64,000 bases of DNA, taken from positions 67,357,499 to 67,421,498 of the forward strand of contig NC_068991.1 of the NCBI RefSeq assembly GCF_001194135.2, given 5' to 3'. The notes under the pieces are model-generated. The model saw only the letters and a program-made list of their open reading frames with translations, was not told the origin of the DNA and searched no databases. Numbering within the stretch: the stretch's first letter is position 1; each line of letters begins with the position of its first letter. Origin of the DNA: Octopus bimaculoides (lineage: Eukaryota). Made by a program: the position numbers and the translations under genes. Of this stretch, positions 33,001-39,000 are shown one piece after another.

Positions 33001-36000
33001 AGATACAGTATTCTGTGTGTCAGTATATCATCATCATCATCATGATTTTAACATCCACTTTGCCATGTTTGTATGGATCAGATGGAATTCTTTGAGGCAG
33101 GTTCTCTACAGCCAGATGCTCATCCTATCGCCAACATTCACTTGTCTTGAAGTGAGACGTTATTTCCTGATGGCTGGACATGTGTGCACAGAAGACTGGA
33201 AATGAGAGATTCTGTTTTATATGAGTGTGAAGCTCATTTATAACTATCATATGATATAAAAACAAGGACACACACACAAGGGGCTTCTTTCAGTTTCCAT
33301 TTAGCAAATTCATGTCCCTTGAGTGTCATGCAGTGGGATCGAACCCAAAATCACATACTTGAGAAGTGAACTTCTTAGTTACACAACCATACCTATGTCT
33401 ATACAGGTAGAGTATATGAGTGTGTGTTTGTGTGTATGTGTCTATGCATACATCTATGTGTTCTTGTATATACCATGTCCTTTTATGTCCAGTAACTTTG
33501 CAATTAAACAAATAGACTTGTCATAAAAGTATTTTTGCAAAGTTCTTAATCTAAGTTTTATTCTAAATTAACCCAATGTCTCTGAGTTAGTTAAATTTCA
33601 GATTACATTAAAAACATTTAAATTAAATCTTACCATAGCTTCCAACAGAGCTTGGTGCTGATGCTTCATTTTGTCAAATTCATCAATACAGCAACATCCT
33701 TGATCAGCAAGAACAAGGGCTCCAGCTTCTAATGCATGGTCGTTTGAACCCGTTTCTTTGCAGAGAGTTACCTGAATAAAAATACATTTGAAAAATAATT
33801 ATTCATTTAATGATATTTAGGTGCAGGAATGGCTATGTGGTAAGTAGCTTGCTTACCAACCACATGGTCCTAAGTTCAGTCCCACTGTGTGGCACCTTGG
33901 GCAAGTGTCTTCTACTATAGCCTCAGGCCGACCAAAGCCTTGAAAGACAGGAAAAGACAAGAAAAGGGAAAAAGAGCGGAAAATGATAATGGTCCTCTCC
34001 ACAGAGTAATGGTGGTAGGGTTACCTGAAAGGGCGAAATAATTTTTATGCCAAGGTCCAGCAGAGGTGCCAAAATCAAATTTGCTTTTCATACTTATGGG
34101 AATCGATAAAATAAAGTCATGTACTGAGGGCTATTGTAATCTCCTTGTCCCCCTCCTCTAAAAATTTTATCAAGTACCGAATTTTAAAAATCAATTATCT
34201 TGTCACTTGAAATGTAAAAGAGATTTGCAAACATCTGCTGCTATAGTTTTGTTTTCTTTCTCCAATTAAAAGAGAAGTTTTATTTATTCAAGAAATTTTT
34301 TCGTAGGGGTAGGTGTGGCTGAGAGGTAAGAAGTTTGCTTCCCAACCACATAATTCTCAGTTCAATTCCACAGTGATGTACCTTGGATATCTTCTACTAT
34401 AGCCCAGGCCAACCGAAGCTTTGTGATTGGATTTCGCAGACGAAAACCGCAAAAAAGCCGGTCGTACACACACACACACATATATATATATATATATNNN
34501 NNNNNNNATATATGTATATCTGTATGTGTTACTATCTTTTTGCCTTGACTTCATATCACGGTCATGTAAGCCCTGTCTGGTTTCCAATTTTCCGTGAAGA
34601 TGCTTGATTATGGAGAAATATTGCCTTCCTTGGAACTAGGTAAGAATTGGCGACAGGAAGGGCATCTGGCCGTAGAAAATCTGTCTCAACAAATTTCACA
34701 CCCGATTCATGCGAACATGGAAAAGAAGACGTTAAAACTGTGATGAAGATCACGTTCAACTTAAAATTTAAAGGGAAATAACTCCAATTCACTACAAGTT
34801 ACTCCTCTTTAAATCCCCGCCGCCAGTTTCCCTCCACCGCTTGTGGATTATTGTCTTCTAACTTTTACTCGAGTTGTAAATAAGGTTTTTTATCGAGTAA
34901 CAACTGTATTAATGCAAGACAAGCTCTCACAGCACCCAGGGGAAAAAAAGCTACAAAACAAAGGAGTAATCAAGCCATAGGAATCGTAAAAAGGAATTAA
35001 GACTATTGACTTCTGAAGGGAAATAATTTCATATTAAACGGTTCTGTTGTTTACTTGGTTGCTGTGCAACTTGGGTCTTTGTGCCTCACCTGTTACTCCG
35101 CGCATCTACCACAGCCGCTGTAGCAATAAGATCGTCTCCACACCTTTACTACTTTGGATATATAGAAGCTGACGATGATGGCAAATATAATAACACGACT
35201 ATTATTACTATTATAAGTCACTAAGTCCCTTCCCCTCTCTCGAAAGAACGAACTTCTAATAATAATGTTTCGAACATTTTAGCCTTTTCTTTTGCATGTG
35301 TATAAAATATTAGCTTTCTAAAATTGCTAGAAAATAATTGAATAGTAATGTTTAAAGGGTTTCGAACAGAAAGGTGCCGAAAATGGAGACATTGGCACTG
35401 TTTTCATTGGAAGTTGTTATAGAAAAATTGTATGTGCCGGGAGTGACATGTCGGATTCCTAGTATTGTCTGTAAGTTGCTAGATTTCCCCGTTCTTACAA
35501 TAAATCTCATTGACGCTAAGTCTGCTGACAAAATGAGGAAGACTCTTACAGCGGACCCCTTGTGGCCGATACCAAGCCAGTTTGATTGTCTTAAGGACCT
35601 TGAAGACACATTCGTTTTCAAACGTGGTAAGTCTTGTCTGTTTAAAATGTCTCCGGAGAACCTTACACACCACTTATGCAATGTCCCTCTGTATTTGTTA
35701 GTGTTAGATAGTTTCCCAGATACTCCTAAATTGTTGGGTAGTGTATCCCTTCCTTTGGATACGGCAGTGAAACGAGTTTGTTCAGAATTTGATGAGGATA
35801 GGTTTAATGTCCCCAAAGTGTTTGCAAATAAAGGACTGTTGCGAATTTACAGTCTAATGGGGAAAGAAATTGGTTATATGACTGTTGGGTACCGCCTTTT
35901 GTGTTTGGGATCAACCCTTTTGACCCACATTACAGAGAAGGAACCCAAGGATACAGCAGATACTGTCTATAGTTCTACAAATGAGAACGATCGTGAGAAT

Positions 36001-39000
36001 AAAGTGGATGCAAAGAAATCAGTAGAAATTCAGACAGAGAATCGAGACCCAGGCCAGCAATATTCTTCCTCAACAGTTGATAGTGATAAACCAGTGAGTG
36101 GCCGAGAAGCAACTATCCAAGACGAAGAGGTGCAGTCTAATATAACAGCAGAGAAGGAAGTCAGTATATATTTATGTGAACCTTCAGAAAAAGAGAATTT
36201 AACACAGAATAACATAGAAAATAATGAAAATTCAAATAAAACACAAAAGAACATAGAAAATACTGAAGACTCAGAGAAGATTTTAGAACGTATTAAGGAA
36301 AGTGCAAATGAAAACACATTCTTTGAGCATTATCACCCACCACCTATGTTTTATCATAATGATGGAAAACCATCATTCCATATTCCTGTGCCATCACATG
36401 AAGAACTAAATCAGCTTTACATGAACAGAGCTGATGGAGAGTCAGATATTTTCAATGAAGACATACAAAGTGACTTTCAGGAACACCAACCTACAAACTC
36501 TGGCAGTTCTTTGCCTTTGCCCTTTGTGCAAAATAATACAAGTGATGAATACACTTTTGAAAGTAAGTTTCCTTTATTAACTGGTATTCTTAAAGAACTT
36601 AGCTCTGTAGATATTCCTTCATTAACCAGTCAAATTTGTTGTAGCATCAAAGAACAGGTTCCTTGCAAGAATTACTTGTCAGAAGGGACTCAAACTAGCA
36701 AGAAAGATACTCTGGCTGAGAAGATGAAGAAAGCAATGTTAAAACAAGGGAGTAGTGCCACATGCAGAGACTGGATCCGGACGACGCCTCGGATTACAAG
36801 TACAAAATCTTTATTGCAATATGGATTAACAAGAACCTATACTTTGAGGCTAGAAAAAATTCGCTCCCAAAAAGAGGAGTCTGCCAAGAAGGAAGCTAGT
36901 AGAATTGGTCAGAAAGCAAGATTTGTTAATGTCATGAAGAATGTGAGTGACACAAGAGCTGTAGTGGAAGAAAAACAATTAGTCGATACATCTAGGACAC
37001 CAGAGGCAGAAGTGGAAACACCAGATGAAAAATCTTTTAAAACACATGAAACTGTTACAATAAAAGAAGATAAAATTATAATTGAAGAAGAACAAGTTGT
37101 ACATTTGGGAAAAGATCAGGAGAGTTTGAAGGAAGAATCCATTATCACTTCATTAAGTATAGACGAGAAAAAATCTGTTAAAATCTCTCAGGCTTCGGTT
37201 TCAACTGCTGGCAGCATCAATAAAAATGATGAGGAACGTAGTTCCAACGTTGCTGATAATGTCAGTGAAAATCATGAAGAACCTGATTCTGGCAGTGCTG
37301 AAGAAATTCCAAATATTCAAAATGAAGTTGAGGCTAGCAAACATTCTCAAATAGAAGACTATAAATTGCAAATGAGAGAGGTAACAGACACTGATGTTAA
37401 CTCAGTGAGCCATGATTCAATATATAAATCTGATAGAGAAGAAACATCAACTATTGATACCATTTCCTCAGAGGCAGATATAACAGACGAAGAATTTGTT
37501 CCCCAAAAAATAACTGAGTCTTTTTCAAAGTTAGAAAAAATGAAAAGTTCAACAGAGGATCATGATAATATGAGTGTGGATAGTAAAATATCTCAAATTT
37601 TGTTTCCAACTGATAGGAGTTCTAAAAGAGTTTTACCAATGTTGAATAGAGAATCAATTAATACAGAGTCTGTGAGTTCTTATAAACCGAGTGATGAGAA
37701 TATCTGGTGGCATACAAGTGGAGACCAGGAGGTGGAGTATTCCGATGACTTTTCTTCTACTTCATCAACCAAATCAAAGGCTAGTACTGAACAGCCAAAG
37801 AACATACTGAGGTCTGAGAACAAACTGGGATATACCATTTGGTGATCATAAAATTAAAAAAAGCTGTCACAGAACTTTAAATATTCAGCATTTTAATTGT
37901 ATTTGTTTATTTTTAAATATTTGATAAAACTTTCAACTCATCACAAAAACATTTCACATTATGAAATACATTATTGCAGATGTTGACATTAAACTTTAAA
38001 CCCAGCTCAGGGATCTGCTAGAATGGTTCAAAATATTTTAACCTTTTACATAAGTCTGAAATATTGAATTTTTAAGTTACATTTGTTTAAATTATGCAAG
38101 ATTGCATTTCCTAAAAAAAAATTACTGTTCATATATTTTCTTAAATAATTATATTTACACCAATAAATATTTATAACATATTTTCATTTTAGCAATCATC
38201 ATTGACTTTTTTTTTTTTCATCTGCTTTTCCATGTTGGTATGGGTTGGACAAGATTTTGAGGTAGCATTTTACAATTGGATGTCTTCTTGACTCTAACAC
38301 TTTTAGTCACCACTTACAGCACACAGGGATACTGTGCACCTATTCTAAAAAGCAGATAGAGAAGAAAAAAACCCAAAACTATTAAAACATAAAAACAAAA
38401 CAAGCCCAAAACTTACAGTTAAACCTGACACAGTGGTTGAATTTCCACAGACATATACACTTCGTGGGGCTACGTTACTCACAGCTTGCAGCATCTGTAA
38501 CACAAAATGTTGCAAAATAATATCACGTATACAGTAACATCTCAATCATCATCATCATCGTTTAACGTCCGCTTTCCATACTAGCATGGGTTGGACGATT
38601 TGACTGAGGACTGGTGAAACCAGATGGCTACACCAGGCTCCAATCTGATTTGGCAGAGTTTCTACAGCTGGATGCCCTTCCTAACGCCAACCACTCAGAG
38701 ATTGTAGCGGGTGCTTTTATGTGTCACCCGCACGAAGGCCAGTCAGGCGGTACTGGCAACGGCCACGCTCAAAATGGTGTATTTTATGTGCCACCCGCAC
38801 AAGAGCCAATCCAGGGGCACTGGCAACGATCTCTACGACATGTATAAGTTATATTAATTCAGACATGTTTGCCTCCCTGGCTCTGTCCTTAGTCTCTTCA
38901 AACTTATATTTGAAGTCCAAGGGAGTTTGTCTATGCTGAAAATTTGTTTATCTTTGCAGGTTGAGTTGAGAAAATTTTAAGTTTATATATCCTCACTTAA

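What the first reader, a model, noticed from the sequence alone, without database searches (positions are those of the whole stretch)
33772..38416. Intronless MAP10 nested antisense inside the intron between the MCM8 Walker A and Walker B regions
Seen: a 2463-nt uninterrupted ORF on + lies wholly within a 4645-bp MCM8 intron. It has its own upstream repeat-free region and a candidate AATAAA only about 250 nt from the donor of exon w13. Known: vertebrate MAP10 is also single-exon but is not linked to MCM8 (human chr1 versus chr20). Inference: a lineage-specific relocation or retroposition into MCM8, or an ancestral nesting lost elsewhere. Convergent transcription could couple or exclude a meiotic/repair helicase and a microtubule/cytokinesis protein in dividing or germ cells.
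Basis: partly seen in the sequence, partly recalled or inferred. Interest (0 to 1): 0.7.

Follow-up and report, generated by a model that had tools for sequence, protein, structure and literature searches.

The report
Octopus MAP10 gene nested inside MCM8
A complete, expressed, single-exon gene for the microtubule-associated protein MAP10 lies on the opposite strand inside one intron of the DNA-repair helicase gene MCM8 in octopus; this is a real, cephalopod-lineage case of the common "gene within a gene" layout, with no sign so far that the two genes regulate each other.

Summary
An 820-codon ORF (35383-37845, +) lies inside a 4645-bp GT-AG intron of MCM8 (33772-38416, - strand). That intron separates the exon after the Walker A exon from the Walker B exon. 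The ORF is a full-length MAP10 orthologue: Pfam MAP10_N scores 56.6 bits, named MAP10 hits run from molluscs to vertebrates, and dN/dS is 0.2-0.28.

RNA assemblies from 17 runs give one colinear, unspliced contig of about 3.36 kb (about 34816-38178). It ends 11 nt after an AATAAA. It is present with or without detectable MCM8 mRNA, and MCM8 mRNA contigs splice the intron out.

The N gap (34498-34507) lies in a microsatellite about 310 nt upstream of the transcript. It touches no exon, and gap-free Octopus vulgaris is colinear across it.

The same nesting, in the same intron and orientation, occurs in O. vulgaris. It also occurs on a contig from an unnamed species whose MAP10 groups as sister to the octopods. 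MAP10 is not in MCM8 in Lottia, Haliotis, Pecten, Polypterus or Clytia, so the arrangement is derived in the cephalopod lineage.

MAP10 coding sequence is single-exon in all molluscs and the vertebrate checked, so intronlessness is not evidence for retroposition. Regulatory coupling is untested. This is an ordinary kind of feature and is already present in the public gene models.

The parts
40154..40222 (-). MCM8 exon with Walker A ([23 protein letters not shown]), 69 nt, phase 0
   Evidence: Loose ends of MCM8 mRNA contigs at 38497 continue with a sequence found once in the window, at 40157-40186. AG and GT sites were read.
38417..38494 (-). MCM8 exon ([26 protein letters not shown]), 78 nt, directly upstream of the host intron
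   Evidence: Translation (frame read by hand). Matches human MCM8. Found in spliced RNA contigs of 11 runs.
33772..38416 (-). MCM8 host intron, 4645 bp including 10 N, GTAAGT...CAG
   Evidence: Sequence. Spliced out in RNA contigs.
33634..33771 (-). MCM8 exon with Walker B (…[25 protein letters not shown]), 138 nt
34816..38178 (+). MAP10 transcription unit, unspliced, about 3.36 kb (5'UTR about 567 nt, 3'UTR about 333 nt)
   Evidence: Colinear RNA contigs with no gaps. Their 5' ends fall at 34816-34848 in 12 runs and their 3' ends reach up to 38178. The strand is inferred from the ORF and the poly(A) signal, not from stranded reads.
35383..37845 (+). MAP10 coding sequence, 820 aa plus stop, single exon
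   Evidence: dN/dS is 0.20-0.28 against two other octopods.
35473..35910 (+). MAP10_N domain (aa 31-176), predicted C2-like beta sandwich
   Evidence: Pfam PF14924 at 56.6 bits. AlphaFold2 model with pLDDT 84.8. Foldseek top hits are CEP120 C2 domains.
38162..38167 (+). AATAAA poly(A) signal of MAP10
   Evidence: The longest RNA contig ends at 38178, and two others end at 38159 and 38160.
37988..37993 (+). ATTAAA, a possible proximal poly(A) signal
   Evidence: Several contigs end at 38012-38059. This evidence is weak, because contig ends are not cleavage sites.
34498..34507 (.). Assembly gap inside a (CA)n(TA)n microsatellite, in the intron and upstream of the MAP10 transcript
33818..33942 (.). 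SINE-like interspersed repeat in the host intron. A second copy lies at about 34304-34470.
   Evidence: Multiple copies occur in O. vulgaris locus L001. RNA and DNA contig depths are very high.

Best explanation
The window is part of an Octopus bimaculoides chromosome (record GCA_001194135.2 CM046611.1; the species name is from my memory of that accession). The single-copy MAP10 orthologue lies as an independent, single-exon transcription unit on the + strand, wholly inside one intron of MCM8 on the - strand.

Shown:
- MAP10 has its own 5' end near 34816-34830.
- It ends near 38178, after an AATAAA, 239 nt short of the upstream MCM8 exon.
- No MCM8 exon is overlapped.
- MCM8 pre-mRNA removes the whole unit by ordinary GT-AG splicing.
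- MAP10 RNA is found with and without detectable MCM8 mRNA.

Inferred:
- The promoter lies just upstream of 34816, in the roughly 200 nt that align with O. vulgaris.
- The protein acts like vertebrate MAP10/MTR120, a microtubule stabiliser needed for cytokinesis. It would do so through an N-terminal C2-like domain plus conserved short motifs in a long disordered tail.
- MAP10 came to lie in MCM8 in the cephalopod lineage, before the split between octopods and the lineage of contig L003.
- The nesting has persisted since then because a gene inside an intron cannot easily be moved out without damaging the host, not because the two genes need each other.
For: MAP10 identity:
- Pfam MAP10_N at E=3.5e-15.
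- 83 homologues, and nearly all that carry a name are called MAP10, from molluscs to mammals.
- Homology to gastropod and bivalve MAP10 covers 60-66% of the protein.
- Motifs are conserved to the C-terminal YSDDF...KLGYTIW.
- The MAP10 tree follows the species tree.
- Only one copy was returned for O. vulgaris.
- dN/dS is 0.20-0.28 overall and 0.09-0.13 in the N domain.

Host:
- The flanking exons are MCM8.
- The public model is an 827-aa MCM8 spanning the locus.

Transcription:
- Unspliced contigs with consistent ends occur in 17 runs.
- MAP10 depth is often above MCM8 depth, for example 111 against 27.
- MAP10 is present in 6 runs with no MCM8 contig.
- The rest of the intron has no unique coverage.

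Nesting elsewhere:
- In gap-free O. vulgaris L001, the MCM8 exons lie at 6980-7117 and 14300-14377 (-) around MAP10 at 10001-12493 (+).
- In contig L003, the exons lie at 3498-3635 and 17239-17316 (-) around MAP10 at 10001-12796 (+), at the same intron position.

Not nested:
- Lottia, Pecten, Haliotis, Polypterus and Clytia.
- tblastn found no copy of the two flanking MCM8 exons within the fetched flanks (up to 10 kb a side; about 2 kb downstream in Clytia, where the record ends).
Against: - The transcript strand is not shown directly. The only raw-read RNA runs are unstranded and shallow, at 0-6x.
- Contig ends only approximate the transcription start and the poly(A) site.
- The organism of L003 is not named. 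Its placement as a non-octopod cephalopod rests on a neighbour-joining tree and on identity levels.
- Nautilus and named squids could not be examined.
- 10-kb flanks and gene models could miss a very large host intron in the outgroups. The annotated neighbours argue against this, because no model spans MAP10 there.
- No experiment here addresses function or regulation.
Confidence: 0.85

Rival explanations
1. The nesting is functional. Antisense transcription of MAP10 through the MCM8 intron couples or mutually excludes the two genes, by transcriptional interference, a shared cell-cycle enhancer, or dsRNA formed between MAP10 mRNA and MCM8 pre-mRNA. Selection keeps them together for that reason.
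For: The same intron and the same orientation are retained in two Octopus species and in the more distant L003 genome. Opposite-strand nested pairs are expected on general grounds to interfere with each other (review PMC4394429). Both proteins act in dividing cells (my own knowledge).
Against: Both RNAs occur together in 11 of 17 bulk runs. The MAP10/MCM8 depth ratio runs from 0.4 to above 4 with no visible pattern. No A>G differences were listed within the MAP10 transcript, so there is no sign of dsRNA editing, though depth is low. Retention of nested pairs is expected without function, and most nested pairs are functionally unrelated (PMC4394429).
Confidence: 0.1
2. The nesting is ancestral, at least to molluscs or bilaterians, and was lost in every lineage other than cephalopods.
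For: MAP10 is an old single-exon gene. A fish MCM8 has an intron only 8 nt away from the cephalopod host intron.
Against: Five outgroup lineages lack the nesting, and MAP10 has different neighbours in each:
- Lottia: a CUB/Sushi gene.
- Pecten: FANCM and TXNDC16.
- Haliotis: cofilin.
- Polypterus: an NTPase_1 gene, which I recall is also the human neighbour (NTPCR).
- Clytia: a spliced, free-standing gene.
An ancestral nesting would need several independent losses. The fish intron is 126 nt and is not at the identical position or phase.
Confidence: 0.04
3. The ORF is a recent retrocopy or processed pseudogene of a MAP10 parent located elsewhere.
For: It is intronless and sits in an intron, which is the usual look of a retrocopy.
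Against: - The ORF is intact in three octopods under purifying selection.
- It is transcribed in every RNA run examined.
- No other MAP10 was returned for O. vulgaris.
- Orthologues in gastropods, a bivalve and a fish also have single-exon coding sequences.
- There is no poly(A) remnant after 38178.
Confidence: 0.02
4. The nesting is an assembly artefact: a misjoin at the N gap placed MAP10 between MCM8 exons.
For: A gap lies between MAP10 and the Walker B exon, and short-read contigs do not bridge it.
Against: MAP10 is joined without a gap to the upstream MCM8 exon (34508-38494). mRNA contigs show that exon splices directly to the Walker B exon, so MAP10 is in that intron whatever the gap length. 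Gap-free O. vulgaris is colinear over the whole intron and across the gap. L003 shows the same order.
Confidence: 0.01

Closest known systems
[quoted passage not shown] 2013, cited in PMC11765705)
   Same: The N-terminal MAP10_N domain is shared. So are motifs conserved along the length, up to the C-terminal end, the single-exon coding sequence (Polypterus) and the similar size (820 against about 900 aa).
   Different: Identity to vertebrate proteins is only 24-36%, mostly in the N domain. The vertebrate-centred PF14925 model does not hit the octopus protein. The genomic position differs: in Polypterus MAP10 sits next to an NTPase_1 gene and is not inside MCM8. Function in molluscs has not been tested.
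Opposite-strand protein-coding genes nested in an intron of a host gene, for example OMG, EVI2A and EVI2B in NF1 intron 30 (PMC4394429)
   Same: The whole transcription unit lies inside one host intron on the opposite strand. It has its own start and poly(A) site. The product is unrelated to the host's, and the pairing is conserved between related species.
   Different: This is a different gene pair in a different phylum. The host intron is short (4.6 kb in this species), so the nested gene fills about 72% of it and ends 239 nt from a host exon.
CEP120 C2 domains (PDB 6ewp, 6flk, 4icx)
   Same: The predicted fold of octopus MAP10 aa 1-185 is a C2-like beta sandwich. Its best solved matches are the CEP120 C2C and C2A domains, at Foldseek E=2e-7 to 2e-5.
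   Different: Sequence identity is 8-14% and TM-scores are 0.4-0.6. This is a fold resemblance only, and no shared binding function was tested.

Membership tests
MAP10 protein family | MAP10_N domain (PF14924) above Pfam's gathering score | tested here: met
   56.6 bits against a cut-off of 21.5, aa 31-176, profile positions 13-144 of 144.
MAP10 protein family | C-terminal region matching PF14925 (MAP10_C / HPHLAWLY) | tested here: inconclusive
   The octopus protein gave no hit at E<=1 for the full length, nor at E<=10 for the last 381 aa. L003's P0005 gave none either. Lottia and Pecten score only 27-29 bits (cut-off 25) on a third of the model, while Polypterus scores 160 bits. Several proteins named MAP10 in molluscs also lack the hit. 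The alignment shows shared motifs (PPPxFY, FPLLTxxLxELS, YGLTxT..LRL, YSDDF...KLGYTI). The model is centred on vertebrates and does not define the family across phyla.
MAP10 protein family | Orthology: best hits are MAP10, a single copy, and a tree that follows the species tree | tested here: met
   Nearly all named hits are MAP10 (one is called myb-like protein V, a few only 'hypothetical'), and only one O. vulgaris protein was returned. The neighbour-joining tree groups octopods, then a sister cephalopod-like clade, then other molluscs, then vertebrates.
MAP10 protein family | Binds and stabilises microtubules; needed for cytokinesis | not testable with these tools
   Known only for the human protein (Fong et al. 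2013).
Nested (intronic) opposite-strand gene pair | The whole nested transcription unit lies inside one intron of the host, with no exon overlap | tested here: met
   RNA contigs cover 34816-38178, and the host exons end at 33771 and begin at 38417.
Nested (intronic) opposite-strand gene pair | The host intron is really spliced and the host gene is intact | tested here: met
   Spliced MCM8 contigs of up to 2797 nt join 38417 to 33771. The public model is 827 aa with all MCM8 domains.
Nested (intronic) opposite-strand gene pair | The nested gene is transcribed from the opposite strand, from its own promoter | tested here: inconclusive
   The orientation of the ORF and of AATAAA, the sharp contig ends and the depth independent of MCM8 all support this. 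The available raw reads are unstranded, and there are no CAGE or 5'-end data.
Retrogene / processed retrocopy | Intronless copy of an intron-containing parent gene that still exists or existed in the lineage | tested here: not met
   No second MAP10 was returned for octopus. Orthologues in Lottia, Haliotis, Pecten and Polypterus already have a single-exon coding sequence.
Retrogene / processed retrocopy | Poly(A) remnant and target-site duplications at the insertion | tested here: not met
   Reading the sequence downstream of 38178 shows no A-rich tract. I did not run a formal search for target-site duplications. An old event would have lost these marks in any case.
MCM8 (host gene) | MCM AAA+ core with Walker A and Walker B, closest to MCM8 rather than MCM2-7 or MCM9, plus MCM8_N and WHD_MCM8 domains | tested here: met
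   Human MCM8 matches at E=1.3e-29 against 4e-16 or worse for other MCMs. GDPGLGKSQ and CCIDEFDKM were read in the exons. PF26065 and PF25051 hit the public model.

The most novel reading that the evidence does not exclude
The MAP10-in-MCM8 nesting has been kept since before the octopod-decapod split because antisense transcription through the intron, or a shared cell-cycle control element, ties expression of a cytokinesis factor to that of a meiotic and repair helicase in dividing or germ-line cells.
Probability: 0.08. Interest if true: 0.5.

Novelty: new member of a known kind. Interest (0 to 1): 0.25.

Why it matters
It matters mainly for annotation and comparative genomics.

- The O. vulgaris annotation splits MCM8 into two gene models exactly at this nested gene. 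Anyone studying MCM8 or MAP10 in cephalopods should know that the two loci are interleaved.
- The arrangement is a clean derived synteny character. It could help date rearrangements in the heavily reshuffled cephalopod genomes.
- It also offers a compact natural case for testing transcriptional interference: the nested gene fills about 72% of a 4.6-kb intron and ends 239 nt from a host exon. Nothing yet indicates that such interference occurs.

Tried and rejected
1. A 72-aa MCM8 query to the large protein database returned only short fragments and no full-length MCM8. I therefore did not map all MCM8 exons in the window and relied on the public 827-aa model and the RNA contigs.
2. Naming the organism of L003 failed. 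The locus may not be sent to the run finder, and the accessions ERZ21867824, ERR3431203 and SRR11869385 appear in no held paper.
3. Direct bridging of the N gap with same-species contigs failed, because microsatellite and SINE repeats break every contig.
4. Strand assignment from raw RNA reads failed, because runs X20-X22 are unstranded and shallow.
5. I looked for A-to-I editing as a sign of sense-antisense dsRNA. No A>G difference was listed inside the MAP10 transcript. Depth is too low to exclude rare editing.
6. I tested whether the host intron is ancient. The fish intron lies 8 nt away in a different phase, so the question stays open.
7. The primary MAP10/MTR120 paper (PMC3619811) is not held.
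8. Literature searches for MAP10 with MCM8, and for nested genes in cephalopods, found nothing relevant.
9. A sequence search of solved structures with the MAP10 protein found nothing. The fold search did find matches.

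
Full report
**What is there**

The window comes from record GCA_001194135.2, chromosome CM046611.1. From memory, that accession is the chromosome-scale Octopus bimaculoides assembly. On the + strand an ORF runs from the ATG at 35383 to the stop at 37843-37845, giving 2463 nt and 820 aa. No other ORF in 33000-39500 exceeds 154 aa.

On the - strand, 38417-38494 encodes [26 protein letters not shown]. 33634-33771 encodes [46 protein letters not shown], which contains Walker B. 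Joined together, the two peptides match human MCM8 at E=1.3e-29. The best non-MCM8 MCM scores 4e-16.

The stretch between them, 33772-38416, starts with GTAAGT and ends with CAG on the - strand, and is 4645 bp long. The next exon upstream, 40154-40222, carries Walker A ([11 protein letters not shown]).

**The gap**

The N run at 34498-34507 lies in a (CA)n(TA)n microsatellite that follows a SINE-like element. It is 876 nt upstream of the ATG and about 310 nt upstream of the mapped 5' end of the transcript. It touches no exon, so reading frame is not an issue.

- Short-read contigs of the same species break at the repeat and do not bridge the gap.
- The gap-free O. vulgaris chromosome is colinear with the window over the whole intron. 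It joins the two flanks of the gap directly and lacks only the microsatellite.
- MAP10 is joined without any gap to the upstream MCM8 exon, and mRNA contigs splice that exon straight to the Walker B exon. MAP10 is therefore inside that intron whatever the true gap length.

**Identity of the ORF**

- Pfam MAP10_N scores 56.6 bits against a cut-off of 21.5, covering aa 31-176.
- The large protein search returned 83 homologues. O. vulgaris is 92% identical, a third octopod is 85% identical, and three cephalopod-like proteins are 32-36% identical. Gastropods and bivalves are 26-33% identical over 60-66% of the query. Clytia, Polypterus, frogs and mammals also appear. Nearly all hits that carry a name are called MAP10.
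- The alignment shows motifs conserved along the whole length, down to the C-terminal YSDDF...KLGYTIW.
- The vertebrate-centred PF14925 model does not hit cephalopod proteins and barely hits other molluscs. I treat it as not defining across phyla.
- Against O. vulgaris and the third octopod, dN/dS is 0.20 and 0.28 overall, and 0.09-0.13 in the N domain. The gene is under purifying selection.
- Only one MAP10 was returned for O. vulgaris. This is the orthologue itself, not an extra copy.

**Transcription**

I laid Logan contigs of 17 RNA or RNA-like runs on the locus.

- All 17 hold MAP10 sequence. Eleven hold one colinear, gap-free contig of 3.0-3.36 kb.
- The 5' ends cluster at 34816-34848. 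The 3' ends reach up to 38178, 11 nt after the AATAAA at 38162-38167.
- Outside the repeats, the rest of the intron has no coverage.
- Spliced MCM8 contigs occur in 11 of the 17 runs. The MAP10/MCM8 depth ratio runs from 0.4 (17 against 42) to above 4 (111 against 27). Six runs have MAP10 but no MCM8 contig.
- The RNA is therefore not a retained MCM8 intron but a separate unit.
- A transcript-like contig from the third octopod aligns over 34951-38002 at 88% identity, again unspliced.

The strand is not shown directly, because the only raw-read runs are unstranded and shallow. It is inferred from the ORF and the poly(A) signal. The 567-nt 5'UTR holds six upstream ATGs.

**Distribution**

- O. 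vulgaris: MCM8 exons at 6980-7117 and 14300-14377 (-) flank MAP10 at 10001-12493 (+).
- Contig L003 (ENA ERZ21867824, organism not named): the same two exons, 81-87% identical in protein, lie at 3498-3635 and 17239-17316 (-). They flank MAP10 at 10001-12796 (+). The exon boundaries are the same and the intron is 13.6 kb.
- L003's MAP10, with two relatives from other runs, forms the sister clade of the octopod proteins, apart from gastropods and bivalves. Its N domain is about 52% identical to octopus, against 41-46% for other molluscs. I infer that L003 is a non-octopod cephalopod.
- Elsewhere MAP10 is free-standing, with different neighbours in each species. Lottia has a CUB/Sushi gene. Pecten has FANCM and TXNDC16. 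Haliotis has cofilin. Polypterus has an NTPase_1 gene, which I recall is also the human neighbour. Clytia has a spliced gene with no listed neighbour, and its record ends about 2 kb downstream of the gene.
- In none of these does tblastn find a copy of the two flanking MCM8 exons within the fetched flanks, up to 10 kb a side.

The most economical reading is one relocation in the cephalopod lineage.

**How it got there**

The coding sequence is a single exon in Lottia, Haliotis, Pecten, Polypterus and the octopods: gene length equals three times (aa + 1). Intronlessness therefore long predates the move and says nothing about retroposition. No poly(A) remnant follows the 3' end. Retroposition and DNA-level rearrangement cannot be told apart with these data.

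A fish (Liparis) MCM8 has a 126-nt intron 8 nt upstream of the cephalopod position, in a different phase. Whether the host intron predates cephalopods is left open.

**What the protein is likely to do**

[quoted passage not shown] 2013, as cited in PMC11765705).

An AlphaFold2 model of aa 1-206 has pLDDT 84.8 and is a beta sandwich. Its best solved matches are the C2 domains of the centriolar protein CEP120, followed by ferlin C2A domains, at E=2e-7 to 1e-4. The rest of the protein is predicted to be mostly unstructured, with short conserved motifs. Function in octopus is inferred, not shown.

**Comparison with what is known, and verdict**

Opposite-strand protein-coding genes inside introns are a well-known layout. 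About 10% of Drosophila genes and about 373 human genes are nested, two-thirds of them on the opposite strand, and most are functionally unrelated to their host (PMC4394429). This pair fits that class.

Both gene models are already in the public O. bimaculoides annotation, with MCM8 spanning MAP10. I found no paper that mentions the pairing.

The observation and the structural interpretation are confirmed. The evolutionary inference resolves towards a lineage-specific event. The suggested regulatory coupling has no support so far: bulk RNA shows both transcripts together in most samples. Interest is modest.

Noticed in passing
L001 (O. vulgaris OX597824.1) 1-9833 and 13141-22493: The O. vulgaris annotation splits MCM8 into two gene models of 356 aa and 464 aa, exactly at the intron that holds MAP10. 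The O. bimaculoides annotation keeps a single 827-aa model. This looks like an annotation error caused by the nested gene.
   Followed up: partly
window 35383-35940 (MAP10 aa 1-185): The MAP10_N domain is predicted with confidence to be a C2-like beta sandwich. Its closest solved structures are the CEP120 C2C and C2A domains. No held paper links KIAA1383 to a C2 domain.
   Followed up: partly
window 33818-33942, 34304-34470, 38545-38700: SINE-like repeats flanking MAP10 show RNA depths of hundreds to thousands, with many A>G and T>C differences. Reads from many genomic copies pile up here, so RNA editing and copy-to-copy variation cannot be separated.
   Followed up: no
window 34816-35382: The long 5'UTR of MAP10 (about 567 nt) carries six upstream ATGs with short uORFs of 5-24 codons. 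This may point to translational control or to a more downstream start site in some transcripts.
   Followed up: no
L011 (Liparis tanakae) 6768-6893 versus window 33772-38416: The fish MCM8 intron lies 8 nt upstream of the cephalopod host intron: phase 1 within the Gly codon of GLT, against phase 0 after GLT. The two positions are near but not identical. Fish also has an extra intron after ADQG.
   Followed up: partly
window 57250-57760: A tandem duplication with a unit of about 260 bp gives the same peptide-like reading four times. It surrounds the N gap at 57501-57510, inside an MCM8 intron near the OB-fold exon (57827-57991).
   Followed up: no
window 38449: One run (X13) has G instead of A in the MCM8 exon contig. 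On the MCM8 mRNA strand this is U>C, so it is not ADAR-type editing and is probably a polymorphism.
   Followed up: no
L004 (Pecten maximus) 1-5237: In the scallop, MAP10's upstream neighbour is FANCM, another DNA-repair helicase. This is probably coincidence.
   Followed up: no
whole window: The window has sixteen N gaps totalling 3855 N. Most of those read closely lie in microsatellite or low-complexity runs, so intron lengths across this MCM8 locus are approximate.
   Followed up: no
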